64,000 bases of DNA, taken from Monocercomonoides exilis PA203. Lineage: Eukaryota > Protista > Preaxostyla. A program made the position numbers and the translations under genes. Position 1 is the stretch's first letter; each line of letters begins with the position of its first letter. The notes below the pieces were generated by a model, which was given only the letters and a program-made list of their open reading frames with translations, was not told where the DNA came from and ran no database searches. This document shows positions 21,133 to 54,523 of the stretch, one piece after another. The stretch covers positions 496,001-560,000 of the forward strand of contig LSRY02000002.1 of NCBI GenBank assembly GCA_001643675.2. The letters are read 5' to 3'.

Positions 21133-21290
21133 ACAATAATCTTTTGAGAAATTGCTGCTTTTCCTTTTTAATATTTAATGTTCATGAATGTTTATCATAG
21201 TATTTATTTTTGAAGTGAACATTGTGATAATTGAATTGACCTATTAAAATTTTTATTTTTATGAACGAATGTGATAAAAACATTTTGTAA

Positions 21291-21810: not shown

Positions 21811-23046
21811 TTGCGAAAAAGGACTTCTTCCCGGGAATTATTAGATTTGAAAATCTTTGTTGGAACAGAAAATGGCAAATGGCAGAGTGAATGTATCTTT
21901 GACTGCAGTTTCACTTCGTGCTCACTTACAGGTTTAAATGGTGGAGGGATATGCCGTACTACTGTTCCAGCTGCATTCAAAATGAGGAACCTCCAATTTA
22001 TTTCGTGCAACGCATTGTCATATGGCGGAGGATTTTGGTTTAATCCGAACCAACAAACAGCACCAAGCAACAACCTTTATTGCTATTTCTTCTTCTTCCA
22101 CGATTGCAGTTGCAACGCCTCCACTCCATATGGCCATGATGTGTATTTTCAAGACAATTACAATTTCTTCTCATCGAACAACCCATTCTACGAATCGTAT
22201 ACAACGAATAGTGATGAAAAGATGGTGTGCTATTGGAATGGAGCATATCAGCATACAGAAAAGAAGGATTGGCTGAAAGAAGGGATGAAGGATCGGTATG
22301 TTGGGGTGAGTGGAAATGACACAAACAATCTGTGTGGGATGACTGAATTGGCACCGTGCAAGACAGTGGGGCATGCGGTGAGTTCGAGCATGGTGCAGCT
22401 GAGCTCGACAATCACGTTGCTGGGTGGAAGGCATGTGAGCGAAGGGGTGACGATCAGTGTTGGGAAAAAGAAGATAATAATAACAGGGAAAGGGAAAACA
22501 ATGAGTGTGATTGGGACGAATTCTCTTTCTTTGACTTCGACAACGCTGTTTAGCGTATCTTCTGGTCAGCTGGAGGTGGGACATGTGGGGATCGATCACA
22601 ACTCTATCAGAAGTTCATTGCAAAAAATGTTTGCAGTATCACTCTGGAAACAGCAGGAAACATGCAGCAATCGAGCTCAACTTTTTTGTTCATCTCCAAT
22701 CAACCATTTTACTCATTTGTGCAGCATTCTCTCATCCTCTGCCACTGCTCAGCCTCGCTCAGATTTCGTGGACAGGACAAGACAGACACTCCTTTCAGCA
22801 GCCAAAGATGGAAAATCTTGTTTCACTCAGTCCCCACAGATTTTTCTGTTGTCTTCGAAATCGCACTGTTCCTCCCCCACATCCTCACCTTCTCCTTCTC
22901 ATTCTCATTCTCCTTCTTCTTCTCCTTCTTCTACAACCTCTTCCTCTTTTTCTCCTTCTTTTTCTTCTTCTGCTTCTTCATCTTCGTATTCTTCTTCTTC
23001 TGCGATTTGCCGTTTTCCACCAACTGCCCCATCTTCAACTTCGTAA
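21811..23046 (+). pseudogene. Chimeric fragment: GGA-type cassette plus first repeat module of the giant surface-protein family (~21855-22630), fused to unrelated Ser-rich sequence
   Basis: FFFFHDCSC...PYGHDV...NPFYESYTTN...EKKDWL...YVGVSGND...CG...PCKTVGHAV parallels 29090-29610 of the 4191-aa ORF. There is no ATG or signal peptide at the start, and no TM segment. Confidence 0.8.
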
Positions 23047-24574
23047 ATGTTTTCTTCATCAACTTCTTCTCCAACTTTTTCGATGCCATTATCACTTTCT
23101 TTGCATTGGATCGGAATATCGACCTTATGATTCATTAAAGCTGTTCAATCGGAAGCACAGACAAATTGAATCAAATATTATTTCATTCACTTTTTATTCT
23201 CTAAACATCATCATAATCGTTATCAATGCCTTTAATTGTTTTGCAAAAAATGCATCAGAACAGCTTTCCTCTTCTGCAGTGGTGCATTTCGCTCTGCTTC
23301 ATCACTTCGAACAGCTTCCGCGATCCGGCTGTTACAAATGGAGTGAATGAGGTGAATGGGCACGGAAGGAGGAATGACTATGGGATTAAGGAGCTCACAG
23401 GGACGTTGCGTTCATCCGCTCGCTTTATGACACCGCCAAGAAGCAACGAGAGAGGAGCGCATGTTCAAAAAGGTGAGGCAAAGAATGTGGATTTCAGAAG
23501 CAAATTGAGCGCAGAGCAGAAGGAAGGAAATCAGAAGGAAGAGCCAAAGACGAAGACTAAGATGGAGAAAGACGAGTTTTGTGCATCTCAAATTTACACT
23601 TTTGATACAAGACTTCAACATGCAGTAACAGAAAGGAGGAGGAGGGACAGGGGAAGAGAAGAAGGAGGTGATGAAAATGATGATGAACAACAGCAGGCAT
23701 TTTACTCGTTTGACTGCACACTCTCATCTGCCCAGCTGCACACTCAAAGTGGCGTAGCCTCCTCGACAATTGCTTCCTCTTCTTTATCTTGCTTGCCACA
23801 CACACAGTTGCCTACCCCTTCTGTTCTTGTTGGAACTCCTCCATAGTTACTTACTCCTTCATCTCCAGCCACCGACTCCTCTTCATTCACACAGAAGTCC
23901 CTCTGCACATTCAACCCAAGCTCTTCTTCTTTATCGTCCATGCCTTCATTTTCCTCTCTTTCATTTTCCACTCCAAAGCATTCATTCATTGGGTTCTATC
24001 GTTCTCTAAATGCTGCAGTCAACAAAATTGCAAGGAATCTTATAAAGCCAGTGAGATAGCAGATAGCGGATGATGATGAGAATTCATTTTCTTAGTGCAA
24101 ACGGAATGACTCAAAAACAACTGGAACATCATCATCTGTAGTTGATAGAGTTTCGAGTGGAGGGGCGAACAACAAGCACAATCAGATAACTTGAATGATT
24201 TCATTTAAATATTTTTCCTTTTTCAATTGGAAATTGTTTTTGGTTTTTTTTAACTGATTGATCATAAATGTGTAAAATAAACAGAAAAAATAACAAAAAA
24301 GAATTAACAAACATTGCGAAATGATGAATTTTATTTTATAGTTGACTGCAGGTCTATTTTGATTGTTTTTATTATTTGTAAATTATTGAATATAATTTAT
24401 CTTCATTCATTTAACAAAACAGTTCAAAAATTTTTTGATAGAAATTCATTATGAACAAATCTTATCAATTATATGATTTTTTTTAATAAACAAATATAAT
24501 TCATAAATAAAAAATGCAATTTAAGAAAGTGGTTCAAGCGAATTTTTTCGAATACCACAATAAATTTTTATCGA

Positions 24575-24717
24575 AAAAAGTTATTCCGAAAAGCCAGAGT
24601 TTATTCCAATTAAATTTTTTTATTCCAATAAAAATTATTTATTCCGAATAAACTTTATTTATTCGAATAAGTTATTATTATTCGAATAAAACCTTTCTAT
24701 TCTCATTGTATCTAGTA
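24575..24717. repeat. Right terminal array of TTATTCGAATAA-type units
   Basis: About 6 degenerate units related to 21291-21430. Confidence 0.8.
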
Positions 24718-25381
24718 AAACAGTTATGAAGTTCAATCAATCCATTTTGTGTAATCTTTTTCTGCAAGTATTATTTTTAATGCATATTAAATATTTAAAA
24801 TATTTTGTATCGAATGAATGTAGAATTTGAGTGCATAAAATATCATAATTTTTCATAAAATATTATGGTAAAGTTAATCAATTATTTGTTTGAAATGTGA
24901 ATTATTTTCTTGCTTTTGGTGTCACTGTATAAATATTATTAATAATTATATCTTCAATTTCATAGAAAATGTGTTATGCATTTGTGCATGGAATCTGAAC
25001 CTCAAAGAAGGGAAAAAGGTTCAAGTTTTTATTTTTTCTTGGCAGCCTTCGATAAGGGAAGAAATGATTACTGAATCGCGAGCATATGAAGATTTTGAAA
25101 AAATCTTTATGTGAATTGCACAAATACAATTTTCAGTTACATCTTATTCATCCGAAAATGTTCAAAAAAACAGATCATGGCTAAGCGTTTAATAACGAGT
25201 GTAAGTTTAGATGAACATCACACACAATACAATTTTATAAACTGTTTAACATTTTGTGGAGGAGGCGTTCCAATGTGGTATCCTCAGTCAAGTTCGGTTT
25301 GGACAATCTGTGAAAACAGAGCGGTAAGTTTTAAAAATAACAAATTGGTGTTGAACTGGTTGGTATTTCTGGATCTATAAT

Positions 25382-26626
25382 ATGAACTCTACTTGCCAAT
25401 TCCTGTTTTCCAAATGCACGTGTGTTGGAAATTCTGGAAACAATTCAGTAGGTTCTTTAACATTTAATGATCCTCCAGAAAATAAGCCAAATCAGTTTTT
25501 GATTGAGGAATGCCAGTTTATCAGGAATAAATTAAATGGTTCTTCTGCTTTTGGCGGTGCTGCGTTATGTTGCACAAACACCTTCACTTGGATGAATAGT
25601 ATAAAGTTCATCGCATTCTGTTTTTTCGATAGCAATTCCGCAACAAATGGCAGAGGAAATGATGTGTTCTTCAATGGCAGCAGCATCACCCAATCTCCAT
25701 TCGAGAATTGTGGCTCAACAACAGCATCAAAAAGAGTGTGGAATCAAGGAACTGCTGATAACGCTGAGTACAATGGCTGGCTCCCACTCATTGCCCAGAA
25801 CAAAATTATTGCAAATGGTGGAAGTGATGTCGATTCCTGTGGCAAAACACAGCAAAGCTCCTGTGCCACGGTGGAGTATGCCCTCTGATGCGTTGATCCC
25901 TTCAGCGATTCCTCCCTCTCTCTTCTCGTCTCCACTTTCACTCCAACAAAGACTCTCACATTTCGTGCTCCAAATACAAAAATCACTGGAAATGGCACAA
26001 CTGCCACCATCATCGCCTCCAGTGGCATTCCCCAACCACCAAACTCACTTTCACAGTCATCACAGTCATCATCATCATTTTCATCCTTGTCATCATCATC
26101 AACATCTTCTTCACCAGATCCATCTGCCACTTCTGCCCTCTTCCAACAGACACAGTGCTCCCTCACAGTCTCTGCCCTCGCCATCGCTCACAACTCCACA
26201 AATGCAATCACCCCCATCCTCTTCCACCTCTCCAATGACTCCCCTTCCCTCAACCTCAACACAACTACCATCACCGGAACAACCTCCATAACAATAAAAA
26301 CTCCCCTCTTCTTCCTCACTGCTGGCTCCCTCGCTCTCAACCACACAGCAATCACCAGACTCGCACTCAACAGCCAAAGCATCTTCCACCTCACCTCCCT
26401 CACAGCACCCCTCTCCCTCAACTCCTCCAACATCACCGACATCACCTCCACAGCCTCACCCGCCAGCTGTGTCCTCTCCTCTGCCACCTCCCCTGCCCTC
26501 TCCATCTCCCTCGCCAACTGCACCATCACCAACATAGACTCAGCTCCACAAAACCAACAGACTGCCACCAATGGCGGATGCATCTCATTCGCCTCATCTG
26601 TCTCTGTTATCACATTTTCTGTTTGA
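25382..26626 (+). pseudogene. Truncated paralogue of the giant surface-protein family with one in-frame TGA (25886-25888)
   Basis: ORFs 25382-25888 and 26087-26626 are in the same frame. They read GGAALC...FCFFDSNSA.NGRGNDVFF...WLP...GGSDVDSCGKTQQSSCATVEYAL*CVDPF and continue to NGGCISF, where the reading frame ends abruptly. Confidence 0.8.
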
Positions 26627-27724
26627 AATCCCTTCTTTGCGGATTTTGTGTGAGCGGAATATAGTTAGTGCTTTAGAAAAAGAGTAGAAAAAATTAACGG
26701 AGAATGACAAATGCTCAGAGAAACAGAAGCAAAAACGAAAAGAAAAATAAATCATTTTGAAAAGATGTTGGAGTTATTGATTCGATGAAGAAGAAGTTAA
26801 TGGGGGAAGAAGAAAATAAAGAAGAAGAAAAAGAAGATGAAGAATGTGGAAAGAGAGATAAAATAAAGTGTAAGAAAGAGAAAAATTACACATTTTTATA
26901 ATTGGACTATCAAACGAGAGAGAGAGTGCAAAGAATGAAAAGAAAAACCTGAAGAGAAGAAAACAAAGAAATCAAAGAAAATATTTCTATGAATTAGGAT
27001 CTTCAACAACACAATGTTGTGTCTAAGGTGAAAGCATTTGAAGCACAACAAAAGACGTGAATGAAGCCAATTTGAGAAATAAAATGGTCAAATAAAATCC
27101 TTTTTCTTTGGGCCATTTTTGCAAATTCTGTGAAATATTTGATCGATTAATTTTCCAATGAAAAAGCTGAAGATATCTGTTTATAAATTCAATAAGGTCT
27201 TCAAATTTTTCGCAAAGATTGATAAGTTAACAACAGGAAAGAAACACAAAAGGAAAATGAAAAGCATTAACCTTTCAAAGGCTGTGATAAAGAATAAGAC
27301 CTTCTTCAACATCTAAAATGCTTAACATTTGATTTTGAAGGGACAAACAATAAAACGATCAACATTCGAGAAAGGAATTAATATCTCTCGAAAGTTCTTG
27401 AACCTCAAATTTTTCTCAAGAATAAGTTAAATCAAAGATATTGCACACAACTGAAAGCAGAATCCGTTGAATCAACGCAATCAATAAGAATTTGTTGATG
27501 AAATAACGTTATAACTGATATGCTTTTCAACAGAATGAATTATCATAATTCACTTACAGAATCGAAAACAAAAAGAATTTGTTATGACTTCATCGATTTT
27601 TTCCTGTGCAATTTATTGACAAATAATTTTTCCTTTTTGGAAAAAAAGTTATTTCAACCATAATTGAAAATTGCAGTTGATCACAGTTTCTGGAAAGAGA
27701 AAAACAAGCAGCAATTTCTTTCCA

Positions 27725-30700
27725 ATGCGCGTAAAGTTGGCAAAATGCAATGGTATCCCCATATTGATACTTTTGGCGCTTGTTCACTCGTCAGTCGAGA
27801 AAAGTGTGAACGAACAAGAAGGAACAGAAAAAGGAATTTCTATTGATTTTGGAGAAAAAGGCATAAATCCATTTGAAAGAGGACGCAATGAAATAAAAAA
27901 CAAAAATAACTTTTTTGCAAAAGACATTTCATGCTCCAGAAATTGTCTCAAAGACTCGTTTTTAAAAGATGTGAAAGAACAACAAATTGAAGAAATAATT
28001 GAAAAAGAAACAGAAAAGGAAACTCGAAAAAGAAGAGAAGAATATATTGATAATAAGGATTTTTTGATAATTAATGACAAACGACGAGAGGCAAAAAGCA
28101 TCATAAGGTGTCAAATTGAAGCATGGAATTCTTCAGTTGCGATACGCAAATTGGAAGTTTTTGGATCAGAGAAAGGGAAGGGAATTGATGTGGGAAGAAA
28201 CTCGTTTTTGCATTTCGAATGTGTGGAGATGATGGTGGAATGCGCACATGAATCTCCAATTCTGTGCATTGGAGGAAGAATCCTTCTGGAAAATACAAGC
28301 CTGAAAATGGAATGGGAAGGGAAAACGATGCCTCCGATGTTTTTCTCTGGGCAATGCAGCAGAAGAGAGAACGAGCTTGGAGAGGCAAAGATAAGAGCGT
28401 GCAGCTTTGGATCCTTCTGCTTGTGGGACACAGCTCCATTTATTGTGTCACCAGCATTTGAGAATGTTGAAGTGATCGGCTCGAGATTTGCGAACATCAC
28501 AGTTGGAAGCCAGTGGAGGTTCGTCGATGGAGGACTATACAGTTGCAAAACAAGGCTTGAATGTGTGGAATACATGCGAGTGGAGGATGTGCTGGATGGG
28601 GCTATTGTTCCTCCGCTGAGCATGCCATCATCATCTGTTGTCTCGCGAAACTGCACCTATCAAGGCAACATCAGACATCCGAACAAATACGATATTTACA
28701 AAGGAAGCGAAGGAAGAAGAGAACTTGACGCATCGGCTTCATTTGAGGACGACACATTCGAAGGCTGCAGAACTGATGCCGGATCAGGAGGGGCTTTAAG
28801 TGTTAAATCTTCTTTAGTGTTGCTAAACGTTACGAGATGCAATTTCACAGGATGCTATGCATATACAGGAGGAGGTGCCATCGATGCGACAAATTCAAAA
28901 GGAGCAATGGTTATTGAAACATTTTTCCTAAATAATACAGCAGAGACTCAAGGAGGAAGCTATAACATGGTTGGGAATAATGAGTGTTCACTAACTCGAA
29001 AGTGTCTGTTCAAAAACAGTCAGGTTTACGAACAAGGAAGAGGAAGTGCTTTCTGTTTAAGCGTTTATTCCAATTATTTTCCAACGAGCTGTCTTGGATC
29101 TGACGATGGAAATGGAGGACAAGCCCAGGTTATGGATTGCCAGTTTGTGAAATGTGTTAATAAAGGAAATTACGGGGCTGTAATGAGTTGGTCATACTCC
29201 AGCATTTTTGCAATGAGGAGTTGCCAATTTATTAAATGTTCAAGTTTTCAAGAAGGAGGTGCAATTCGCCACCATTTTGTTAAATGTCCAGGAGATCAAA
29301 CGAATTTGAAAGCATTTTTCTTTTTGTTTTTTCATGAATGTTCTTGCACAAATGGTGAGAATCCATTGGGGCATGATGTTCGTCTTTATCAAACAAGTGC
29401 AAATGTGAATATCACATCGACACCTTTCAAAGAGAGTTATACAACAAACACTAACGAAAAACGGTTATTTAATATGGGCACAGGTAAATATGAAAAAGAT
29501 TGGCTTCCAACAACGAAAAAGTTGTTCACCTCTTGCTTTGTATCAACAAGTGGGAATGACGGGGACGAGTTGTGTGGGTTATCTGACGAATCGGGATGCA
29601 GAACAATTTCACATTCGCTGGGGAAGTGCATGACTCAGTTTGAGTCGATGATATTTTTGGGGAAAGGAACACACACATCAGAGGAGGGAGAAATAAGTGC
29701 TGGAAATCGGGAGCTGAGTGTGCGTGGGGAGGGTGTGGAAGAGACAGTTGTGAGCACAAACAGCATGGAGAATGGAGACAGTCTGTTAAGTGTGACAAGC
29801 GGAAGAGTTTTTGTGAGCTTGTTCACAGTCGAGCACTCACACACGAAGCATGAGATGAGACTGTTTGTTGTGAGGGGAAGTGGAAGTGTGGAATTGAAGA
29901 GAATGCGGATGCAGCCATCAAACGGACATTCATCTCTGAATGCATTTGGAGCATCACTGATCGTGTCTGGAGCAGGAGAAGGGAAAGTGGGGATGGAGCA
30001 GGTTGAGATTGGAAACTTTGTGCTGGAAGATGCGCCAATTATCGATGTTGAAGGGAAATGGAAAGTGACAATGTCATTTACCACTTTCAGGAATATTGTG
30101 AGGTTGAGGGGAGGTGGGAGTGTGATATCGAAGAGTGTGATAGAAGGTGAAGTGTTGCTGATGAACAATGTGACGATGCAGGGATGCAGATGTGAGAGCG
30201 GGGACGGAGGAGGAATGGCAGTTAGGATGGAATCAGGAGCTCGTGCTCGTGTGGGGAATGAGAGCGAAGTTTTGTTTGGTGGGTGTGAGGCGAAAAAAGG
30301 GCAGAACGGAGGAGGAGGGTGTGGAGGAGGGATGATGATTGAAGTGAAGGAAGGAGGATATGATTTTGTGATTGACAAAGCATCTTTTGAAGGGTGTGTG
30401 GCAACAAAGGCAGGGAGCAAGCTGTTTGTGAGAGCACCCCAGATGGAAGAGGTGGCGAAGAGAGAGCGGCTGAAGTTTGCAATTGATGAAAGCAATCTGA
30501 GTGAGGTGTGTGGTTTTGAGAATGGGGATGAAGCGAATGTTATTCCACTTGTGGTGTATCTGCGGAGTAAGCCAAATGAATACTATGTTGGAGGGCGGAA
30601 CAAGAGAGACTGGGAGATGTGTGGATTTGGAGATGTGCAGTGTGCGAGTGTGGATTATGCGATCAGGAAGCATGGGACTGGGGCAGGGATAACAGTTGTG

Positions 30701-40818: not shown

Positions 40819-42230
40819 TCAGAAAACATAATTATCCATGCACTCAGCTGATGGCCCATTCAACTTGCAACAAAACGATTTCATGAAGCAAATGATCATC
40901 TCTTCGCAACCTTCGCTTTCCAGCTTTTCACATGTCCATCTTCTGGTGCTCTCCTCGTATGAATTGGTTCTTTCTCTCAGCTTCTTCAACATCTTCGAAA
41001 CAAAACCCAAGCAATGCTCAGTTGCAAGATATTCCAGCGTTGGCTGGCTCAATCCTTCCAGAACAACATCAACAGATCCGCCTCTCACCAGCACTGCAAC
41101 CGACACATCCCCCAACCTCATCAGAAACCCAACCTGTTCGATGCACCTCAGAAACATATCTTCCTCACAGCGCCTTGTTGTTCTGCCCAGCTACACGACA
41201 CACCCATCCAACCCAACACATTCTTTGGAACACAATCGACACTCTCAAAAATAAGTTCCATATTATCACCAACCATCTCATTATCAGCCACACCACCTTC
41301 TTTTCTTTCACTTCTTTTTTCTTTTTATTTTTCTCTCCAATCCACACATTCCATCAGCACTTCAAGCTCATTCGCTGCCTCTTTCCCAAAGTGCAGCTCT
41401 CCCTCAATCATATCTTCCACTCCTGCCTCTTTTCTCTTCAGCTGCAAAATCAGAAGATCACAAGCGCTCTGATACCCCATATTCGTGAGGTTGCCATGCT
41501 CCTCGTGTTGCCTGATGATTCCCAAAAGCCCTTCAACACATATCCTTGCTTTAATCCATTGTCGAAAAAAGAGAAATATCATATTCTCACAAATCCCTTC
41601 AAAAAGACAACAATGTGCACACTGAATCAATTCTCATGAACTTCAAAGCAAACAACGCATATTCTGCTTCTTTTTGCGCCTCTGCCTTCTCCTCCCCCTC
41701 CTTGTTCGAAGAAACCTTCAGGAGACAGCGAGCACACGTGGATACCAATTCCTCCTCCATGCAATAATGATACACATGCAGAGAAAAGAACACTTCACAG
41801 AGGTCACTCAGTCACTTCTCATTCTTCCCTTCTGTCTTCTTCTCCTCTTCCCCAATCGCCAACTCAAAACTCTTGCACAGCGCAGAAGAATAAAAGTTTG
41901 GATTCTTTTTATCATTCAGCATCCGCCAACATCCAATCTGCTTCATCAGCGGAACAATCTCTTCAACGATATTTTCTTTTCTCCAACCATTTTCTCGATT
42001 TCATCAAAGACTTCTTTCTTCGAAACTATGCCCAGCTCCCTTTTCACTCATGCCCCCCACCAAGCCTGCCATTTCTTTGATTTTCTGCCTTTTCTCACAC
42101 TCACGCAAATTCCCAAGCTGGCAAAGCATTTCTTCAAAAAGAGAGATATTCCATCAACACAAAACATCACATGCAAACACAAATGAAAGTCTGCACGCTT
42201 CGCCTTCCTGTCTGAAACTTCCTCACTCAT
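40819..42230 (-). pseudogene. Frameshifted member of an alpha-helical (ARM-like) lineage-expanded hypothetical protein family
   Basis: Consecutive minus-strand ORFs 41599-41793, 41325-41630, 41165-41347 and 40819-41157 each shift frame. Motifs CLLKV...E.QKE.E.AL.AL, H.NLT...YQSA, ELHF.KEAA.ELE.L..CVDW and ...E.LE.EG.EE recall a multicopy oxymonad family. That family assignment is from recall and was not searched. Confidence 0.65.
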
Positions 42231-42724
42231 CTGGAGCATCCGTTCTTTTGTCTTTTTGATCGAGAAATTCAATGCAGCAGCAGTTTTTGCAACGGAATAA
42301 AAATGCATCTCAACAAATACACAGATTTCTCAATTAAAAAACATCTGCAAACAATTGTGCTCAACAAAAGCGGAGCTGGAGAAAACAAAATAACTGATAA
42401 AAAAATGTTTCGTTTTTTATGTTTCTCAACGTTTTCAGTTTTTCTTGGAAACATGAAAAGATGTTGTCTTTCAAGCACCAACAAAGAGAATAACAGAAAT
42501 AAAAAATATTGAGAAAATAATAGAAAAACATTGAAAATACTCGATGTTGTTGTGTGAAAATGGATAAAATGCTATTATAAATATCAAACAAATCAACTGG
42601 CTGAATTTTGTTTTGACGAATTTTTCTCTTTTTTTCAACCAAAGAAATGATGTTTCTTCAAAGATCAAATAATAATTTGAGTTTTCTGAAGTTTTGCACG
42701 CAAGAACCCGAACAAATTCCTGCT

Positions 42725-45700: not shown

Positions 45701-48700
45701 TCTTCTTCTGATTCTTCTTCATCACCTTCATCTTCAACAGCCAATCCACAGACCTCGTTCACTCAGTGCAGCTTTGCCAGCATCAAAGGAAGCGAAGGCA
45801 CAAATGCGCTTTTTTCGACAAGTCCATTGATGACAGGCTCGGTTGCGTTTGAGCAGTGCAACTTGACGGATTGTGTGGGAGCCAGTTCGACTGAAGGAGG
45901 AGGGATGCGATGGGATGTGTGTGACTCAGAAGAGATGAAGATGATCAATTGCAACGTCAGCAGCTGTGCTGCGAAAGAGAGCGCTGGAAGCAGCAGAGGC
46001 AGCAATGATGAAAACAGCAAAGGCAAAGGAGGAGGCGTCTATCTGATTCTGAATGGGTCTTCGAGCAACTTCCTTTTTGAGTCGTGCACTTTCTCAGACA
46101 ACCGGGCAGAGGTGGGCAGAGACGTGTTCATTCAGTGCGAGAAGTTGTATCAGGCAGCCGATTTGTCGAAATATGTGGATGTGTTTTCGAGTGCATTCGA
46201 TGTAGAAAACTCGTTCTTTGGTGCCGAAAGTTCAGCATTGTCGAATACTGTTGATCTGCTGGATGCGATGCGATACAGAAGCACAGTTGTGTTTGTGTGT
46301 GGGATCGCTCCTTCCTCTTCTTCTGCCATCAATTTTGCCATCAATTCTGACCCATCTGCACCAACCAGCCAAACAGGTGTCGACTGGTTCCGCTGTGGTC
46401 CCTCGGATGATCCGTGTGAAACGATCGATTTCAGTCTGAAGCAAAAGGCAGCAGCAGAAACGGAAGCAACAGAAGAAGAAGAAGGAGGAGAAATGCAGAA
46501 AATAAAAGTGAAGGAGTGTTCGTTCATCAAAGCAGAGATTGACCTTTCTGATTCGATTTTGTCAGCCGCAGAAGAAAGCGAGGAGTGCAGAGTGGATTTT
46601 GTTCAGTCGATTCCAAAGGCAACAGGAATTGCCATCACAAACACGAAAACAATGAAAATCTCTCATGTTTCATTCAATGTTCCAACTGCATTCACAAATG
46701 GCATGACGATCCTGATTTCATCGCAAAGTGGAACAACATCGTTAGAATCATGCAATTTCTATTTGAATTCATCTTCTTCATTTGCTCAGTCAAATGATGA
46801 CACTGATTCCTTCTCGTTTCCTCTTGTTGGAGTGTTTTCTGGTGTGCTGTCTGTTGTCTCGTGCTGCTTCGGTTCAAATTCAGCAGTCAATTTTGGTTCT
46901 GATTTGATGGAAATCAGCGACTCAGTCGACTTCACCTTTGACACAGCGACATTTCAGAATTTGTGCGTACACTCTGATTGTCTCTTCAAAGTTGTGCATT
47001 CAAACGAGGCTTCTCTGCTTCATTCGACTTCTGTTTCTGCTTCTGCTTCTGCTTCAACAAGAGCACAAACAGAACAAACAAAAGGAGAAGGAGATGTTTC
47101 TGGTGAAGACTTTTCAGAGTATTCATTCAAATTCCTGAACTGCACATTCAACTCGATCTCTTCAATCACTTCAGTCTCTTCAGTCTCTTCAGCTGTTCGG
47201 ACTGGAAAAGCGTCGCTTCTGTCGCCTGAACACGCTGCGAGTGTTGTTCTGTCGAACTGCTCTGTCTCCACATGTCTCTCTGAAGGATCCCTCGAAGGAG
47301 GAGCACTTCGCCTGTCTGCCTCGTCTCAGTCGCCTTTCACTCTGAAGAAGAGCAGCATCAGCAGCTGTGCGTGTAACACAGCCAGCGGAAAAGGTGGCTT
47401 CTTGTTCCTCTGCTTGGACGGAAGAGATGCCGAATTCAACTTCGAAGAGCTGACTTTTTCTGGAAACGAAGCAAAAGTGGGAGAAAACATGTTCCTCGCT
47501 TGCACAGAATTGAATGCTTCGATCAAGACCTCGAAGTTCAACTTTGATTTCTCTGATTTTGCTGACAATATCAACGCCTTTGTCGGCAACGACACAAAAT
47601 ATGGAAACAAAGATTTGGCACTGTTTTTATTTGCTTATTTGGGAAGCACAATCAACGTAGGCTCGGAGGGATTGGATTTGGTTGGGTGTGGCACTCGTAT
47701 TCCGTGCCACTCATTTTGGACATCCATAAAGCATATTGACACAGAAGCCAGCAACAAGCGAATAATTATAACCTCCTCAACAGACGTCGAAGACGAACAC
47801 GACATTTCTGGGCTGATAATATCATCGCAGAATGCTTTGAACCCACTTTCTGACTCGCCTTTCCCTTCTTCAACGCTTTCCGTTCATTCCAAACTGAACA
47901 GTTTGAACAATTCACAAAAAGGTGTGCTTGTCAATTCTCGCAGAGCCACGATAGAAGATGTTCTTATTTCGATTCCTTCGTCCTTTTTGGATGGGAATTC
48001 TGTTTCGATCAATGAGAATGTGCTGTTTGCGAGTGAATGCGACGATGCAGCAGATTTGGGAGGGAGCGGGCTGAGTCTGACGAAATGCATATTCCAAAAG
48101 CAGATAGATGAATCTGTGAAGTACAAGTTGGTTGCTGTCATGAAAGGGAAAGTGTCTTTGTGTGATGTGTGGGTGGAGGAGATGGCATTCAGCTGCTCTG
48201 CTTTTGCATTCAGTTCAGGAGGCGTTTTGTGGTTTGAAGAATGCCATTTTGCGTCAGTCAATTTGGAACCGAAATCTTTCATTGAAATGTTGGAGGTGGA
48301 AAAGCCGAAAAATGAAAGAGAAAGAGAAAAAGAAGGAGAAGGAGGTTCATCAACAGCTGTTCTTCTGTTGAACGCTTCTTCATTCAGCAGCATCAACAAT
48401 GGAGCATCGAATCCGTGTTCTTCGATATTCTCTCTTCAGAACAGCTACGAAGTTGAAGTTGTTGGATGCACTTTCCAGACACTCGGCTCAGAAGGATGCA
48501 AAAAGGGAGGAGCGATGTCTTTTGAGCTGAAAGGAGCAGATGGACAGCTGAAAATGAAGGGTGTGGGAGTGACGAACAGCATCTGCAGCAGTTCTGAAGG
48601 ATGTGGGGGAGGAATCTATTTGACATGTGCAACAGACAACAATGACAGATATTCATTTTCAGAGATAAGTGTTGGGGGAAACAAGGCACACCAGGGAAGA

Positions 48701-51700
48701 GACATGTTTATTGTGGCGAATGATCTGAGGAAGGGTGTGAATTCTGAGTTGTTTGCATTTGCGACACAATTTGAGGAAAAAACGAATGCGCTGGTTGGGT
48801 TTGACAGGAGGTATTTCAACGAGGCGATTGATCTGATGATTTTTGTGGAAGGTTTTGTGAGTGCGTCTGTTCTGATTGAGGCGCCAGCAGGGCAGAACGA
48901 GGTGTTTTGTGGGAGCAGATATGTTCCGTGCCAATCGCTTGACTATTCTGTCAATCGACTTGCCGAGTGCAATGCAGATGTGCCACTTCGTGTGATCACT
49001 GTGAAATCGAATGGCTCAATCGAAAATGACATTTCACTCAACTCAGTCAATGTTCTGTCATTTGGCAAAGAAAACAGCGGGATTAACATCAGCACCAATG
49101 TTCAGTTTGCATCTGGAAGTGTTGTTTCATCCACAGCCGCTCTTTCGTTTTCTTCGATCGATTTTCATATTCCACATGTTTTTGTTATTGAGACACCCGA
49201 AGGTGCTTCGTTGTTTTCCTCTTCGACAGAAACAGGAAACATCCAATTTTCATCGTGCTCTTTCATTCTCACTTCTTCAGAATCGCAAGATAGAGCGAGT
49301 TGTGTGCATTTGATCAGCGTTTTGGGTGGAGTTGTGCAGCTTTCTCAATGCCATGCTGATTCTGCCTCATTTTCTGTTACGCCTTTTGTGATTTCGCAAA
49401 CAGCCCAAGCTTCATTTGAGGGAGTTAGCTTTGCACATTTATCATTTTCATCTTGCTCACTTTTCGATCTGATTCCTTCAACACCAGAAGAGAAAGATGA
49501 TTATTCCTCTTCAGCCAATCAAGAATCTCAGCCAGTTGAAATAAGCTTCAAGAACTGTGAATTCAAATCTCTTCATGTGAGTGAGTATGACGAGCAGCCT
49601 TCGTTTGGGTTTGTTCAGCTTGAGACGCATCTGTCGATTGTGAACTGCTCTTTGGATGATTTGACATCTGCGTTGAGTGAGAAAGGTGGAGGAATGAAAA
49701 TTGAACTTGGAACAGAAGGAAGCTTCTGTCTGAAGGGAGAAAATTCTGAGCAAATAAGTTCTGTTAGCCATTGCACTTGCTCGACTTTTGTTGGAAAAGG
49801 AGGGTTTTTGTATCTGAGCTGCTGCAACTCGATTGATGGATTCTCTTTGTCTGATTTGGTGTTTTCTGAGAATGAAGCATTTGTTGGGAGAAACGTGTTC
49901 ATATTGAGCTCCGATTTGAATGCCTCTGTTGTCATTGAAAGGTTGATGTTTGATTGGACTGAATGGAAGAACACAACAGCTTTCTTTGGGGCAGATGAAG
50001 TGAATTTTACAGAAGGCATTTCTTTGGACAAGCTGCTGTTTGAACACACAGACACTTCTGTTGTTGTGTCGTCGAGTGGAAGAGACATTCGCGGGTGCGG
50101 ATCAGAAAGGGAGCCTTGTCTGTCATTTTGGGAAGGGATGAGGCATTTCAGAGAAGGAGTCCAATTCAGAGAAATCAAAATCAACACAAGTGCTGCCATT
50201 TCAGACGAGTGGGATCTTTCAAACAGTTCAATAAGCCCATCTGTTCCTTCTTCTCCTGGTTATTCTTCTTCTTCTGATGAGCCTTCGTCAGATGAATGCA
50301 CAATCAATGTGGGAAAAACGATTCAATCTCTTTCTGAGCCTTCTGAGGCTGTGCTCACAAACAAGCTTGTGCTCACATTCACCTCCATCAATTTCTGCCT
50401 GCCTTCGTCTTTCGAAACACCACAAAAGGAACTTCTTTTCACAGAGACGGGAACAGCCACACTTAACAAATGCTCCTTTGCGATGCAGACAGCAGAAGAA
50501 GGCATTGCCTTTGTTCTTTTCCATGTTTCGTCTGGGACACTTTCGATTGAAGGGTCCAAAATGGCCGAGCTCTCCTTTGCGACATCGGCCATCCGACTTG
50601 CTGCGCCAGCTGCACATTTTGTGGCAAGCGCTTTTTCTGTTGATGTTCTGAATTTAGCAGATGGATCGTTTATTTCTGTGGGCGATGCTGAAGAGAAGGG
50701 AAATGAGGAATCAGTCTTATCAGGGAATGACAAAGAAATGATAGCAAGCGAAATCAGACTGGAGAATCTTCAGTGGCATCTCATCAGCAGCACAAATGCG
50801 AGGACTTCGATTATTTCTTATGAGAGCGCGTTGTCTGTGGCGTTGACGATGGACAACTCGACATTCAGCGACTGCAACAGCGAGTCTCTTCTGGGAGGAG
50901 CGTTTTGTGTGTGGATGAAGGAGAAGGCGGGTGGGTTGGCTGGCAGCTGGGCAAATGAAGGCAGTCTGCTGGCGAATCTGTCGTCTTTTGTGACATGTGC
51001 GTGCTCAACGAGTGATGGCAGAGGAGGCGCAATTGTATTGAATTGCCTGGACGATCCAGAGCATTCAGATGCTCCGTCTGCGAAGAAAGCGAAGGCGCTT
51101 CCAATCAAATTTCGGTTGATTCGGTTTTCTTTGAACAGAGCGAGTGTGGGGAAGGATCTTTTCATTGTCTGCCGATCGATTGCTGAGCAGATCAACGAGG
51201 CGCTGTTTGCGATGGACTTCAGCGAGCTGGCCTTTGACAGAAATAATGCGATCTTCGGGATGGACAAAGAAAACGAGGGGCCAATTGATTTGGTACCATT
51301 TATTGTGTTCTACAAGTCAGAGCGGGTATTTGTGTCAGCAGAGAAAGGAAAGAACAAGAAGGACTGTGGGCGAAGGGAAGACCCGTGTGAGACACTCAGC
51401 GAGGCAGTGCGGCATCTGAACGACGAGCAGTACCAGAACGTGCTGGTGGTGAAGAAGGCAGCTGTTTCAGCAGAGACAGCCATTTCATCAGCGACAGTGC
51501 AGACAGTCGGAGGCAGCCCAGCTGTTTTTGAGTTCAAATGCGAAATCGCTCAGACAGGTGGAAGTGCGGATTGTGTTGTGTCTTCGTCTGAGGAGTGCAG
51601 CATTTTGGGGATGGACATCGTCTTCGGACCCAGCTTCGCTTCACCTCATCGCTCTGTCTTTGGCGTGAGGAGCGGAAATCTGACACTGGGCGACTGCACA

Positions 51701-54523
51701 ATCAGGTCAGAAGAGCTGGCGCAGTTGGCAAACACCGTAATTTATGTTGAGAGTCATTGTTTGTGTTTGAGCAATGTTTCGTTCTCATCCATCCGCCTGC
51801 AGGCATCAAGGCAGCAGCCATTAGCAGCAGCATTTGGAGCAAAGCAATCTGAACAGTCTTCTTTTGCTTTGTCTTTATTTGAGCCAGAGGCAGGCCACTC
51901 ATTCATTGAGGCCTGCTCAGGTGCTGCTGTGGTGCTAGATGGTGTCTGCTTCAAAGAGCTATCTTTATTTGTTGTGTCGGGCGATACCTCGCAGTCGGCT
52001 CATTTCATCAAGTGCGAGTCATCGTCTCTGACAGTCAGCGGGCTGAGAATGGAAGATTGTTCTGTTTCTTTTATTTCGCCAACTGATTCGGTTTCTTCTT
52101 CTTCTTCTTCTTCTTCTCACAATTCATTTGAGTCATCTGCAAACTCTCTCATTTCTGTGTCTTGTGACAGCGTGGTTATTCTGGGAGACATTCAGATTGA
52201 GCGTATTTTTGAGTGCTGTGGTGTTCTGTCTGCAGAAAGTGGATGCAAAGTGGAAGTAAAGCAGAGCAACATCTCTTCGCTGTCTTCGCATTCATCTGTC
52301 TTTGCAGCAGAAATATCTGCATCTGTTGTTTTGAGAGAAGTTAATATCAGCCAAGTGGCTGTGGAAGAGGGAAGCTTGTTTGCTCTTCTGTCTCTTTCTC
52401 CTCATCTTTCTACTCTTTTCAATGAAGAATCAGATAATTTTGAGTTTAATTCTGAATTTTACATGGCAGTCGATGAAAACGGCGAAACGCAGTTTGAGTT
52501 GATTTCTTCAGAAATCAGCAATATTCAACTGAAATATGCAGAAGGATCAGCTCTGAAAGCAGAAAATTGGAACAGCCACATTCTGATTGACTCGTGTGTG
52601 TTTAGCAACATCAGTAGGCAGCGTGAAAGAGGAAGCTATTTGGATTTGACCTCGTGTGGAAGTGTTGCAATGGAAAAGAGCTCGTTTTGGGGTGTTGCAG
52701 AAATGAGAAGCCAAAATGGACGGAATATTCATTCAAAAGTGAATGAAAATGATGAAATTGGCGAAGAAACTGATTTTGTGTGTGAATGGAACAGCTCATC
52801 AGTCAACTTTGTAGGAAGCACAGCGAATATAAGCAATACTTCATTTGAGAACTTCTCTCAAGGAGCCATTTCTCTGTCTAACTCGACTGTAACGATTGAA
52901 ATGGGGATGCTTCAGAGCAACAATCCATTTGTTTCAGGCTATCCTTCTCTTCGGCGCAACATTTTGTGTTCAGATGGAAGCACGTTGAATGTGAAGAGTG
53001 TGAAAGGAGGAGATGGAATGAACAACTCCTCATTTTGGATATTGGGCAAACATTGCACTTTCAGAGGAATCATAACAGAAGTTTCCTCTCCTTTCTTTGT
53101 TCCCAAAATAACATCTGCGCAGACAACAAAACGAGAAGACAAGATGGAAATTGAATTTGTGGGGCAGCTCTTGCTGCCATGCAACCTGGAAATTCAGTTC
53201 ACATTCAAAAGAGGAGAATATTTTATGCTGAAAGAGTGCGAAAAAGTGAATTTTGTTGACGAGAACGAAATTAGCTGCGAAATGGACCGTTCATCATATG
53301 AATGGGAAGATAAAGAAACGGAAGTGTTTGTACGTATTTTGTTTGGGGAAGAAGCAAGAAAATCAACAGAGAATTTTATTCTGAAGAACGGAAGCAAATC
53401 TCAACCGAAAGAAGACGAAAGCATTAACAAAACAGACGAAGGTGACAGTAAAAGAGAAATAAATCCGAATGACACAGGGAGCAGCACCGATAAAAAGAGT
53501 GTGATTGAATGGAGTTTAATTGCATTGGTTGGATGTGCATTTGTTCTTGTGGTATTTGTGTTGGGATTCGTTGGAGTTGTGTGTGTTCTGCGGAAGAGGC
53601 TGAAGAAAGCAGAGAAGAAAATTGAGGAAGTGAGCTTCGAAAACATGGTTCTGATGGGAAAAATTGAGAAGAGAAGAGGAGAAAACAATGGAGGGAGCTT
53701 TGAGATGAGTGAGATGCCATCCACACTGCTGGAGGGGATGACGAGCCAGATCCCACTTCTCATTGACAACGATGAAGATCTTCCAGAGCCTCCGTCAATG
53801 ACTGATGAAGAGTTGAATGAGAATGATCTGCCAGATTTGGAGTTGCCATTGCCATTTTCTGAAGATGTGTCTGTTTCTGAACTTCATCAGAACAATTCAT
53901 TCAATGTTATATCAGCAAAGAAGCCATTTCGAGAGAAGGAGAAAAAGAACCTGAAAACATTGCACTCGGCGATTCATTCAGTTGAAGGGGATTTCACACT
54001 GGGAACAAGAGCGATGGAAGTTGTTGATGGGAAGGAAGTTGTTTTGGCGGTGGCAGAGCTGTTTGAGCATCTGATTTCAGCTGGAGACGAAAGGGTGGAA
54101 ATGATGGGGAAGCAATTGTGCCCGTATTCAATCTTTGTTGAGGAAGGAAATGGAAATGGAAATGAAGTATTTGTCTTGGGAGAGGAATTGGAGGATGAGA
54201 AGCAGAAAGAAGAAATGAAGCGATGGCAGGCACCAGAGCTGTGGAATGAAAGGAACGAAGAGGAAGAGGATGGGATTGAGCAGGCAGTTGTGTTTTCACT
54301 TGGGCTGATTCTGCATGAGATGACAACAGGAGAAGTGCCGTTGAGCGAGTGTGGTGCAGAAGAAGCACAGGAGATGATGAGGGATGGGGTGCGACCGCTG
54401 ACAGAAGGAATCGAAGGAGAAGAAATGGTTGAGCTGATGGAGAGGATGTGGGCAGATGAGCCAAATGAAAGACCTTCGTTGGCTGAGGTGATTCAGTTGC
54501 TGATGGAGATGGCTGAGAGTTGA
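42725..54523 (+). CDS. Second giant intronless type-I membrane receptor-like protein (~3930 aa) of the same family, with degenerate kinase C-lobe
   Basis: Signal-like MRLLHLACAFFYFVAAQLAS from ATG 42725 (the ORF is open from 42647). A GGAIYF/GGAIFI cassette precedes 7 CG....(P)C modules. Shared domain C.WN.S...NNP...YPS.RRNI.CS...VKS.KGGDG...LLLPCNL. TM at ~53510-53590, then RWQAPE, FSLGLILHEMTTGEVP and MW..EP.ERPS. Confidence 0.85.
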   Translation: MRLLHLACAFFYFVAAQLASLDHEKAAIKPKEQFLPAVLLTNSSLESSNLVLDERGCSAVFSVDKDSKLHLTRVTSLKPASHFHPSCVSSGQCFFVNFSVVFEAAWNRSACSLAGLSGGAGRSSVLFSSFDSLVFCPLKSSSFVCGGIGDSESVEGCIFSNVTAKEEPIKELQMADHLSAVNSSVLLNNTFFRCADVYYGTVVHGLSPSSPACDFRSSFDRFIRCTHSQSTEKSSKFHFSRTERVPMANQHGIFSNEEWIECKGQQGGAIYFDGYYITKDYDLNISNSVFEKCHSDDKGGAIFIYKIYRHKCAGCHFFGNTAVNDPQDIYVANTDSYYKIANFAFSNSYSTTTGTSFYINGQGNFSNFIANMSEQMKTKPSGVDGWGCGLGTIPCQTIAYAYSAQRTKYIMSMLCEEGTYTPPALTISEKPLTLAGTGMDKTTIGSSVANNAIFMVSGNKLVVQNLCFLLSKKNSRILRMTSASSFSSSLGHSSNEPNSFYSSNSGRSNSQFESIKINQTANSELSTSLFSIESGQFSVSRLTAVNIRLSSSFFSLFFFSSCNNPSISDCVFDNITAWYSAVASIYSPIFTQLSSSNLTLSLQNCSFNNITSKDCATGGCLAFNAKLTSLSSDSSISNIASSLSINNCSFSLCASKPANSKGGAIYANYGRSKPTETDFYVFNTSFSSNQATFGSDLYFVCFDFEESVNDQLFGFVSTAESIKGIQMSIFGDDFNYFQGDPIDLMIFLKGYFAMTVYATSESSGEDIFFCGEIRRKCSTVNYALGRLASPSSSFSNGQRTIYISGSSTVTSSGNLLSSVSILSDVGSTAKSSLSSSSSSFSSDSVKANLRIPSFVTGRSSYIFHSSGETSFNCLAFSIAPSVTDEVKHLLQSLVSLQNGILTLSDCSFQWDESYSSNFYSSSLILISSDQRADAKLVINQCTISHSASLAISAPIFDLSQGSISSQFTSLHIQNVTSSSRSSAVFAFKSSFSSSSDSSSSPSSSTANPQTSFTQCSFASIKGSEGTNALFSTSPLMTGSVAFEQCNLTDCVGASSTEGGGMRWDVCDSEEMKMINCNVSSCAAKESAGSSRGSNDENSKGKGGGVYLILNGSSSNFLFESCTFSDNRAEVGRDVFIQCEKLYQAADLSKYVDVFSSAFDVENSFFGAESSALSNTVDLLDAMRYRSTVVFVCGIAPSSSSAINFAINSDPSAPTSQTGVDWFRCGPSDDPCETIDFSLKQKAAAETEATEEEEGGEMQKIKVKECSFIKAEIDLSDSILSAAEESEECRVDFVQSIPKATGIAITNTKTMKISHVSFNVPTAFTNGMTILISSQSGTTSLESCNFYLNSSSSFAQSNDDTDSFSFPLVGVFSGVLSVVSCCFGSNSAVNFGSDLMEISDSVDFTFDTATFQNLCVHSDCLFKVVHSNEASLLHSTSVSASASASTRAQTEQTKGEGDVSGEDFSEYSFKFLNCTFNSISSITSVSSVSSAVRTGKASLLSPEHAASVVLSNCSVSTCLSEGSLEGGALRLSASSQSPFTLKKSSISSCACNTASGKGGFLFLCLDGRDAEFNFEELTFSGNEAKVGENMFLACTELNASIKTSKFNFDFSDFADNINAFVGNDTKYGNKDLALFLFAYLGSTINVGSEGLDLVGCGTRIPCHSFWTSIKHIDTEASNKRIIITSSTDVEDEHDISGLIISSQNALNPLSDSPFPSSTLSVHSKLNSLNNSQKGVLVNSRRATIEDVLISIPSSFLDGNSVSINENVLFASECDDAADLGGSGLSLTKCIFQKQIDESVKYKLVAVMKGKVSLCDVWVEEMAFSCSAFAFSSGGVLWFEECHFASVNLEPKSFIEMLEVEKPKNEREREKEGEGGSSTAVLLLNASSFSSINNGASNPCSSIFSLQNSYEVEVVGCTFQTLGSEGCKKGGAMSFELKGADGQLKMKGVGVTNSICSSSEGCGGGIYLTCATDNNDRYSFSEISVGGNKAHQGRDMFIVANDLRKGVNSELFAFATQFEEKTNALVGFDRRYFNEAIDLMIFVEGFVSASVLIEAPAGQNEVFCGSRYVPCQSLDYSVNRLAECNADVPLRVITVKSNGSIENDISLNSVNVLSFGKENSGINISTNVQFASGSVVSSTAALSFSSIDFHIPHVFVIETPEGASLFSSSTETGNIQFSSCSFILTSSESQDRASCVHLISVLGGVVQLSQCHADSASFSVTPFVISQTAQASFEGVSFAHLSFSSCSLFDLIPSTPEEKDDYSSSANQESQPVEISFKNCEFKSLHVSEYDEQPSFGFVQLETHLSIVNCSLDDLTSALSEKGGGMKIELGTEGSFCLKGENSEQISSVSHCTCSTFVGKGGFLYLSCCNSIDGFSLSDLVFSENEAFVGRNVFILSSDLNASVVIERLMFDWTEWKNTTAFFGADEVNFTEGISLDKLLFEHTDTSVVVSSSGRDIRGCGSEREPCLSFWEGMRHFREGVQFREIKINTSAAISDEWDLSNSSISPSVPSSPGYSSSSDEPSSDECTINVGKTIQSLSEPSEAVLTNKLVLTFTSINFCLPSSFETPQKELLFTETGTATLNKCSFAMQTAEEGIAFVLFHVSSGTLSIEGSKMAELSFATSAIRLAAPAAHFVASAFSVDVLNLADGSFISVGDAEEKGNEESVLSGNDKEMIASEIRLENLQWHLISSTNARTSIISYESALSVALTMDNSTFSDCNSESLLGGAFCVWMKEKAGGLAGSWANEGSLLANLSSFVTCACSTSDGRGGAIVLNCLDDPEHSDAPSAKKAKALPIKFRLIRFSLNRASVGKDLFIVCRSIAEQINEALFAMDFSELAFDRNNAIFGMDKENEGPIDLVPFIVFYKSERVFVSAEKGKNKKDCGRREDPCETLSEAVRHLNDEQYQNVLVVKKAAVSAETAISSATVQTVGGSPAVFEFKCEIAQTGGSADCVVSSSEECSILGMDIVFGPSFASPHRSVFGVRSGNLTLGDCTIRSEELAQLANTVIYVESHCLCLSNVSFSSIRLQASRQQPLAAAFGAKQSEQSSFALSLFEPEAGHSFIEACSGAAVVLDGVCFKELSLFVVSGDTSQSAHFIKCESSSLTVSGLRMEDCSVSFISPTDSVSSSSSSSSHNSFESSANSLISVSCDSVVILGDIQIERIFECCGVLSAESGCKVEVKQSNISSLSSHSSVFAAEISASVVLREVNISQVAVEEGSLFALLSLSPHLSTLFNEESDNFEFNSEFYMAVDENGETQFELISSEISNIQLKYAEGSALKAENWNSHILIDSCVFSNISRQRERGSYLDLTSCGSVAMEKSSFWGVAEMRSQNGRNIHSKVNENDEIGEETDFVCEWNSSSVNFVGSTANISNTSFENFSQGAISLSNSTVTIEMGMLQSNNPFVSGYPSLRRNILCSDGSTLNVKSVKGGDGMNNSSFWILGKHCTFRGIITEVSSPFFVPKITSAQTTKREDKMEIEFVGQLLLPCNLEIQFTFKRGEYFMLKECEKVNFVDENEISCEMDRSSYEWEDKETEVFVRILFGEEARKSTENFILKNGSKSQPKEDESINKTDEGDSKREINPNDTGSSTDKKSVIEWSLIALVGCAFVLVVFVLGFVGVVCVLRKRLKKAEKKIEEVSFENMVLMGKIEKRRGENNGGSFEMSEMPSTLLEGMTSQIPLLIDNDEDLPEPPSMTDEELNENDLPDLELPLPFSEDVSVSELHQNNSFNVISAKKPFREKEKKNLKTLHSAIHSVEGDFTLGTRAMEVVDGKEVVLAVAELFEHLISAGDERVEMMGKQLCPYSIFVEEGNGNGNEVFVLGEELEDEKQKEEMKRWQAPELWNERNEEEEDGIEQAVVFSLGLILHEMTTGEVPLSECGAEEAQEMMRDGVRPLTEGIEGEEMVELMERMWADEPNERPSLAEVIQLLMEMAES

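What the first reader, a model, noticed from the sequence alone, without database searches (positions are those of the whole stretch)
21855..54523. Candidate cassette-shuffling receptor system: intact giant receptors flanked by partial cassettes sharing one hinge
Seen: four co-oriented family members lie within 33 kb, two intact and two fragments (21855-22630 and 25382-26626). Both fragments cover the same piece: the end of the AT-richer GGA(I/L)/FxxN cassette plus the first stalk module. In three copies the cassette ends at a Trp-Leu hinge (KDWL ~22270, GWLP ~25780, KDWLP ~29500). Base composition switches abruptly right after the hinge: to G-rich, C-rich and G-rich respectively. Known: silent partial cassettes feed expressed loci in Borrelia vlsE, trypanosome VSG mosaics and agnathan VLRs. 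Inference: the distal cassette and the stalk are exchanged as units, generating a diverse surface receptor or adhesin repertoire.
Basis: partly seen in the sequence, partly recalled or inferred. Interest (0 to 1): 0.85.

Follow-up and report, generated by a model that had tools for sequence, protein, structure and literature searches.

The report
Patchwork oxymonad receptors; fragments are recipients
The giant surface-receptor genes of the gut protist Monocercomonoides exilis really are patchworks made by copying short DNA segments between family members, but the two broken copies here are not spare cassettes for their neighbours: one is cargo of a jumping gene, the other a decayed duplicate, and both are overwritten by the family, with no sign that they feed it.

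Summary
The window is from Monocercomonoides exilis. The four family members and three Trp-Leu hinges are real; the donor-cassette reading is not supported.

The four belong to four subfamilies with no DNA similarity to each other, so the fragments cannot feed the two intact neighbours. Fragment 1 is cargo of a 3.42-kb inverted-repeat (probably hAT) element present at 13 or more loci, so its ends are one inherited capture. Fragment 2 is a decayed gene piece co-duplicated with its neighbour. Both are being overwritten by family sequence (recipients); no donation was found.

Mosaicism is real (PHI, shared tracts, AU tests on 100 full-length proteins) but spread along the head. The hinge is a domain boundary and one recurring breakpoint: it starts a ~45-aa cap with five interchangeable alleles that swaps alone, not the whole stalk. 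Kinase-remnant tails also swap. The composition step lies -72 to +135 nt from the hinge and is subfamily-wide.

Best reading: segmental gene conversion plus birth-and-death, no programmed switch shown. The scan had already reported this family's mosaicism and receptor-carrying elements on other DNA; I found no paper describing it.

The parts
21294..24714 (.). 3.42-kb non-autonomous DNA transposon with inverted ends (TAGAT...ATCTA) and subterminal 13-bp palindromic repeats; carries host gene pieces; probably hAT-type
   Evidence: Inverted arms; sharp shared left end with unrelated flanks in 9 copies; 13 or more copies with the cargo at 76-85%, plus 2.4-2.9 kb, 5-6.8 kb and 170-235 bp versions by paired ends; imperfect target duplication GTAACAG 21287-21293 / GTAAAACAG 24715-24723
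21301..21426 (.). Left subterminal repeat array
   Evidence: 11 of 12 window matches of the 13-mer lie in the two arms; 0.55 expected by chance
24600..24714 (.). Right subterminal repeat array and inverted end
21860..22621 (+). Fragment 1: last ~135 aa of the beta-helix head, KKDWL hinge (Trp 22270), cap allele A and start of stalk module 1; transposon cargo, overwritten by family sequence
23982..24220 (+). Second, decayed piece of the same subfamily (start of the head), inside the element and out of gene order
   Evidence: 68-71% DNA to intact F1-type genes; tblastn E 1.6e-9
25211..26656 (+). Fragment 2: head end, GWLP hinge (Trp 25778), C-rich stalk module 1; TGA at 25886-25888; no inverted repeats around it; co-duplicated with the 27-kb gene
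26600..27724 (.). Spacer shared with a twin locus (C14:675-677 kb); 98-100% identical over 26600-27199, 91-98% beyond; dates the duplication
27725..40246 (+). Intact giant receptor G27 (MONOS_1931), 4173 aa: N-terminal domain, beta-helix head, hinge (Trp 29501), about seven capped beta-helix stalk modules, one TM helix, kinase C-lobe remnant
29501..29640 (+). Hinge and ~45-aa Cys-containing cap of stalk module 1 (segment that comes in discrete alleles in the F1-type set)
38885..38941 (+). Transmembrane helix of G27
   Evidence: Hydropathy 3.46
39794..40084 (+). Kinase C-lobe remnant of G27; no GxGxxG, HRD or DFG
   Evidence: PF07714 positions 162-257 only
42647..54523 (+). Intact giant receptor G42 (likely start 42725, 3932 aa): short head without WL hinge, at least six stalk modules, TM 53534-53590, kinase C-lobe remnant 54194-54499

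Best explanation
These are members of the largest M. exilis gene family: single-pass surface proteins with a variable right-handed beta-helix head on a stalk of capped beta-helix modules and a dead kinase-remnant tail. Copies similar enough to pair exchange short segments (tens to a few hundred bases) by ordinary ectopic gene conversion that starts and ends in conserved blocks (mosaicism shown; mechanism inferred). The HTEKKDWL linker is one such block, so divergent alleles of the ~45-aa cap behind it are swapped as a piece; other blocks do the same within the head, further down the stalk and at the membrane (shown). Gene birth and death, segmental duplication and transposon capture scatter fragments, which keep being overwritten as long as they resemble living genes (shown for both fragments here). 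They are mostly sinks. Function as adhesins or receptors for bacteria, glycans or the host surface, with selection for head diversity, is inferred.
For: PHI p=0.001 (F1-type, 17 loci) and 0.006 (F2-type, 27 loci). Identical tracts of 36-388 nt between otherwise ~80% identical paralogs, partners changing along the gene, 8 tracts crossing the hinge. In 100 full-length proteins picked by the head only: distance correlation head vs module body 0.30 against a clonal simulation of 0.54-0.90; the two head halves 0.42; cap vs either flank 0.29-0.32; the two halves of the module body 0.75; cap type needs 41 changes on the head tree, 32 on the body tree, 9 on its own. AU rejects each segment's tree for the other two (p<=0.006). 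Pairs with 74-78% head and 75-84% body identity have 39-47% caps. F2 and its twin: 98-100% in the adjoining flank, 92-95% in the module, 60-80% in head and cap. Element copies: 72-86% in cargo vs 90-93% (7 of 8 copies against the window) in adjoining element DNA, cargo never monophyletic in bootstrap trees, stops or frameshifts in several copies, more alleles absent from genes (1.8-8.1% vs 0.5-2.7%). MONOS_1540 joins a G27 ectodomain to a G42-type tail. dN/dS 0.22-0.37 with variable columns in register beside the GG motifs.
Against: Direction of transfer into intact genes cannot be read from one assembly; element copies share 43-94-nt tracts with genes, which fits either direction. Ten of 17 F1-type loci are short forms with open frames and the same dN and dS as long forms, ending 183-201 aa past the hinge; these could be true donors. 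DNA samples are the best 30 of hundreds and were chosen by a match across the hinge. AU tests with a segment's own tree included are liberal.
Confidence: 0.7

Rival explanations
1. Donor-reservoir system: truncated head+module-1 copies (mainly arrays elsewhere such as contig C42, perhaps also transposon-borne pieces) are kept as an archive that feeds intact receptors by biased conversion.
For: Short forms with shared 3' ends, intact frames and inverted pairs on C42/C80; a 388-nt identical tract between a short form and a longer gene, and 187 nt between another short/long pair; earlier scan notes s1-463791 and s1-471001 read other windows this way (direction not checked by me).
Against: For the two fragments in this window: no DNA similarity to the neighbours, a stop in F2, transposon context of F1, recipient signatures, F1-specific peptides absent from 112 full-length proteins. 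No directionality shown for the short forms either.
Confidence: 0.17
2. One reading: distal cassette and stalk are exchanged as whole units at the WL hinge, with the flanking fragments as silent cassettes, as in vlsE/VSG/VLR.
For: The hinge is a local minimum of left-right congruence (0.21) and five cap alleles begin exactly there; head and body trees are incongruent.
Against: Equal or lower values inside the head (0.13 at -170 aa, 0.21 at -220); sequences return to the common type about 45 aa later; all five close paralogs of G27 and of G42 match straight across the head-stalk junction; 0 of 272 F1-type pairwise homologies end within 300 nt of the hinge and 14 of 716 F2-type ones end in the first 100 nt after it (biased sample); fragment ends differ and are inherited.
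Confidence: 0.06
3. Plain birth-and-death without exchange; apparent mosaicism comes from star-like radiation with recurrent mutation, or from assembly chimeras in repeats.
For: Star-like trees; Nanopore assembly with homopolymer slips (paired copies differ by frameshifts); PHI is not significant for the F1-type stalk (p=0.30) and borderline for the F2-type head (p=0.054).
Against: Clonal simulation on the most star-like tree still gives 0.54-0.72 where 0.30 is seen; perfect tracts up to 388 nt; twin loci 98-100% in the flank but 60-80% in the head; short-read contigs match the window's unique parts (24680-25595) with no substituted letters.
Confidence: 0.07

Closest known systems
M. exilis tyrosine-kinase-like family (PMC6759080, PMC8767320)
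   Same: This is that family: largest in the genome (320 TKL), overlapping 'unclassified repeats'; G27 is MONOS_1931.
   Different: In the passages found, the papers do not describe the beta-helix ectodomain, the loss of catalytic motifs, mosaicism, cap alleles or transposon-borne pieces.
Chlamydial Pmps and trichomonad Pmp-like proteins (PMC6701047, PMC11166332)
   Same: GGA(I/L/V) and FxxN repeats marking beta-helix coils; trichomonad versions also have a C-terminal TM helix and are candidate adhesins.
   Different: No autotransporter barrel, no ATPITK motif; about 4000 aa, many capped modules, kinase-remnant tail; hundreds of recombining copies.
Borrelia vlsE / trypanosome VSG mosaics / agnathan VLR
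   Same: Segmental copying between conserved blocks diversifies variable positions on a fixed scaffold.
   Different: No single expression site, no contiguous ~90%-identical cassette array for these neighbours, no one-way transfer (definition from PMC11499132); exchange occurs among many intact genes and into fragments.
Ectopically recombining surface and receptor multigene families (Plasmodium var homology blocks, plant NLR/RLK clusters, chicken Ig pseudogenes; from own knowledge)
   Same: Birth-and-death plus conversion at conserved blocks, variable distal domain, homogenised stalk, domain and tail swaps.
   Different: Different fold and lineage; selective agent and rate unknown here.
Pack-type non-autonomous DNA transposons (Pack-MULE, Pack-CACTA, gene-capturing hATs; from own knowledge)
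   Same: Inverted ends, dispersed copies, scrambled host gene pieces, no transposase seen.
   Different: Cargo keeps being overwritten by its parent family; superfamily only inferred; autonomous partner not found.

Membership tests
vlsE/VSG-type silent-cassette system | Silent cassettes ~90% identical to the variable region of the cognate expressed gene | tested here: not met
   No blastn match between any two of the four window members; F1 vs G27 only 30-48% protein identity in the main blocks; best remote relatives 82-86% DNA
vlsE/VSG-type silent-cassette system | Contiguous cassette array with common boundaries | tested here: not met
   F1 inside a transposon, F2 a lone decayed piece; ends differ by hundreds of bases. 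Short forms on C42 do share ends but are not these fragments
vlsE/VSG-type silent-cassette system | One-way transfer, donors unchanged | tested here: not met
   Both fragments are overwritten relative to their sister copies; no F1-specific peptide in 112 proteins
vlsE/VSG-type silent-cassette system | Single or exclusive expression site; switching within a clone | not testable with these tools
   Only assembled contigs of RNA runs, which cannot show transcription or level
   Boundary scan: hinge 0.21, inside head 0.13-0.43, cap 3' side 0.34; only module body 47-227 aa is coherent; tracts cross the hinge
Pack-type non-autonomous TIR transposon | Terminal inverted repeats and dispersed copies with sharp ends | tested here: met
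Pack-type non-autonomous TIR transposon | Captured host gene pieces, no transposase | tested here: met
   Two family pieces; no long frame other than cargo-derived ones and no PF05699 match in the element
hAT superfamily | 8-bp target duplication (nTnnnnAn) and (C/T)A..T(A/G) ends | tested here: inconclusive
   Ends fit; window flanks GTAACAG / GTAAAACAG fit an 8-mer only with a one-base slip in each A run; all 9 left flanks have A at -2; right ends of other copies not held
hAT superfamily | Autonomous partner with hAT transposase and the same ends | tested here: inconclusive
   Genome has many ~900-aa frames with the hAT dimerisation domain, but none of the 41 listed matches lies in the 5-6.8 kb versions
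Pmp-like beta-helix adhesins | GGA(I/L/V) and FxxN repeats forming a right-handed beta-helix | tested here: met
   4-5 GGA(I/L/V) and 11-16 FxxN per giant; model of an F1-type relative, pLDDT 73, nearly all beta; matches are parallel beta-helix proteins, with low TM scores (~0.2)
Pmp-like beta-helix adhesins | C-terminal autotransporter barrel (Chlamydia) or ATPITK motif before the TM (trichomonads) | tested here: not met
   Pfam finds only kinase remnants; motif absent before either TM helix
Receptor TKL kinases | Ectodomain, single TM, cytoplasmic kinase-like region | tested here: met
Receptor TKL kinases | Catalytic motifs GxGxxG, HRD, DFG | tested here: not met
   None present; only the C-lobe with xAPE

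The most novel reading that the evidence does not exclude
M. exilis runs an undescribed eukaryotic receptor-diversification system in which conserved blocks (the KKDWL hinge among them) delimit interchangeable segments, and truncated copies, including transposon-dispersed ones, are maintained as a donor archive that rewrites the binding face of hundreds of giant beta-helix receptors fast enough to matter within a host or culture.
Probability: 0.15. Interest if true: 0.85.

Novelty: new variant of a known kind. Interest (0 to 1): 0.45.

Why it matters
The largest gene family of the model amitochondriate eukaryote is annotated as tyrosine kinases or unclassified repeats. It is in fact a set of giant beta-helix surface proteins with dead kinase tails whose heads are reshuffled by gene conversion, which points to strong pressure at the interface with gut bacteria or the host. 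The discrete cap alleles and twin loci give clean markers to measure rate and direction of conversion in clonal cultures. The result also warns that fragment boundaries here reflect transposon capture, not cassette design.

Tried and rejected
I did not fetch more DNA of this genome by another route, so target duplications of other element copies and the long element versions were not read. The first DNA samples were biased towards matches across the hinge, so the hinge test was repeated on proteins chosen by the head alone, which changed the reading: the hinge is one real breakpoint. Pfam finds nothing in either fragment. The hAT dimerisation search did not hit the long element versions. No inverted-repeat element around F2. 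The C-rich stretch 40830-42260 is not a family fragment. RNA contigs cover parts of the element and F2 at low depth but cannot show transcription. The literature searches found no description of this ectodomain or its recombination. AU runs failed twice for a thread setting and were rerun.

Full report
Source. The window is G000:C14:496001-560000 of an 82.3-Mb, 101-contig genome, the size and contig count of the Nanopore assembly of Monocercomonoides exilis PA203 (PMC8767320). The 27-kb gene is identical to MONOS_1931 wherever the two align. Published work calls the largest family 'tyrosine kinase-like' and notes that it overlaps unclassified repeats (PMC6759080, PMC8767320).

Anatomy. G27 (27725-40246) and G42 (open 42617-54523) are single-frame proteins of about 4000 aa. 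Each has an N-terminal domain, a head of GG-motif repeats, six or seven stalk modules each opened by a Cys-Gly-x-Cys cap, one TM helix and a kinase C-lobe without GxGxxG, HRD or DFG. A model of head + module 1 from an F1-type relative is almost all beta with one helix in the cap, and its structural matches are parallel beta-helix proteins (alginate lyases, tailspikes, Ag43), though with low TM scores. The WL hinge is therefore the linker between two beta-helix domains (inference from the model; the linker itself has low pLDDT). G42 has a short head and no WL hinge.

Observation check. The hinges are where stated. The fragments overlap in content but not in ends: F1 -410..+351 nt, F2 about -570..+850 nt from the Trp, and F2 has a TGA at 25886. 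The composition step is at -60, +120 and +48 nt, only the F2 one clearly above chance, and it recurs at the same offsets in intact relatives.

The fragments cannot feed the neighbours. No two of the four members give a blastn match; F1 and G27 align only as proteins. Each has its own subfamily: F1 and F2 have hundreds of candidates at 78-86%; G27 and G42 have five close paralogs each, matching at 85-93% straight across the head-stalk junction.

Fragment 1 is transposon cargo. It lies in a 3421-bp element, 21294-24714, with inverted ends, subterminal palindromic 13-mers (11 of 12 window matches, 0.55 expected), a sharp left end with unrelated flanks in nine copies and an imperfect target duplication. 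At least 13 loci hold the element with this cargo; shorter, longer and miniature versions exist. A second piece of the same subfamily sits at 23982-24220. Both ends of F1 thus descend from one capture. The cargo differs between copies (72-86%) more than the adjoining element DNA (90-93% for 7 of 8 copies against the window), never forms one clade, and carries stops or frameshifts in several copies. Its alleles are more often absent from genes, and five peptides peculiar to the window copy occur in none of 112 full-length proteins. The hAT assignment is an inference from ends and flanks; no partner transposase was located.

Fragment 2 is a decayed, co-duplicated piece. A twin at C14:675-677 kb lies upstream of a G27 paralog. 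The twins are 98-100% identical in the adjoining spacer, 92-95% in the C-rich module and only 60-80% in head and cap, so at least one was overwritten after duplication. A few older loci share its 3' junction at 70-77%; no inverted repeats bound it.

Is exchange focused on the hinge? In DNA from 17 F1-type and 27 F2-type loci, PHI is significant overall (p=0.001, 0.006), neighbouring 150-nt windows are nearly uncorrelated almost everywhere, and identical tracts of 36-388 nt lie along head and stalk, eight of them crossing the hinge. Because these loci were chosen by a match across the hinge, I repeated the test on 100 full-length proteins chosen by the head only. There the hinge is a real boundary: five discrete alleles of a ~45-aa cap begin exactly at the WL and return to the common sequence afterwards, and close pairs (74-78% head, 75-84% body) can have 39-47% caps. 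But left-right congruence is as low inside the head (0.13-0.43) and at the cap's far side (0.34) as at the hinge (0.21); only the body of module 1 is coherent (0.56-0.75). All three segment trees reject each other and head-body congruence falls well below clonal simulation. Tails swap too: MONOS_1540 has a G27-type ectodomain and a G42-type tail. Heads have deeper synonymous diversity than module 1 (dS 0.54 vs 0.28; 1.06 vs 0.21), overall dN/dS below 0.4, and variable columns in register beside the GG motifs.

Mechanism. Shown: mosaic structure, cap alleles, tail swaps, capture of F1, overwriting of both fragments. Inferred: ordinary homologous gene conversion primed in conserved blocks; selection for a variable binding face; an adhesin or receptor role. 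Not shown: an expression site, one-way transfer, or switching within a clone. The best candidates for true donors are not these fragments but the short forms on C42/C80, which share 3' ends, keep open frames and share tracts with long genes; direction is untested.

Earlier scan notes. The same family, its conversion mosaics, candidate donor arrays and receptor-carrying Merlin and hAT elements were noted on other DNA of this genome, and the element in this window was noted separately. I found the element and the mosaicism before those look-ups; the hAT idea was prompted by them. None mentions the hinge or the cap alleles by those words.

Limits. One assembly gives no rates. Homopolymer slips may be sequencing errors.

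Verdict. Real features, partly right intuition, wrong role for the fragments. New variant of a known kind; interest 0.45.

Noticed in passing
L006, L011, L018, L021, L023-L028 (contigs C42, C80): F1-type short forms with open frames that end 190-196 aa past the hinge, most in a shared hydrophobic tail (..LALGENYLLFILF), several as tail-to-tail inverted pairs about 3.8 kb apart; same dN and dS as long forms. Donor array or GPI-anchored/secreted short proteins.
   Followed up: partly
L007 vs L008: Near-identical inverted pair differing in a three-residue patch whose two versions both occur in other paralogs: a small conversion tract.
   Followed up: no
L032, L033, L043, L050, L053 (C25): F2-type truncated forms with a shared frameshifted end about 440 aa past the hinge.
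   Followed up: no
P0005 (MONOS_1540), P0008 (MONOS_11638): G42-type cytoplasmic tails (62-66%) on G27-type or F1-type ectodomains: tail swaps near the membrane.
   Followed up: partly
window 25900-26600 and 29700-38000: Opposite coding-strand skews in homologous stalks: C-rich in F2-type (third position C 0.51, G 0.04), G-rich in G27 and F1-type, with near-neutral heads. Cause unexplained.
   Followed up: partly
Miniature 170-235 bp versions on C20, C25, C67, C91.
   Followed up: partly
window 14017-21132: 2371-aa protein with an N-terminal kinase domain that looks Wee1/Myt1-like and a long Ser-rich tail; the element sits about 160 bp behind its stop.
   Followed up: no
window 40830-42260, minus strand: Decayed copy of another protein family (looks helical-repeat-like, with EAEYALFAL-type motifs), not part of the receptor family.
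   Followed up: partly
window 29075-29330 (G27 head): The public model MONOS_1931 lacks about 85 codons of the head (and N-terminal sequence) although the frame is open and paralogs keep these residues: probably a false intron call.
   Followed up: no
P0113-P0115, P0124, P0127: Distant head homologs in Streblomastix strix and Blattamonas nauphoetae (the latter with kinase and PP2C domains): the head repeat type is shared across oxymonads.
   Followed up: no
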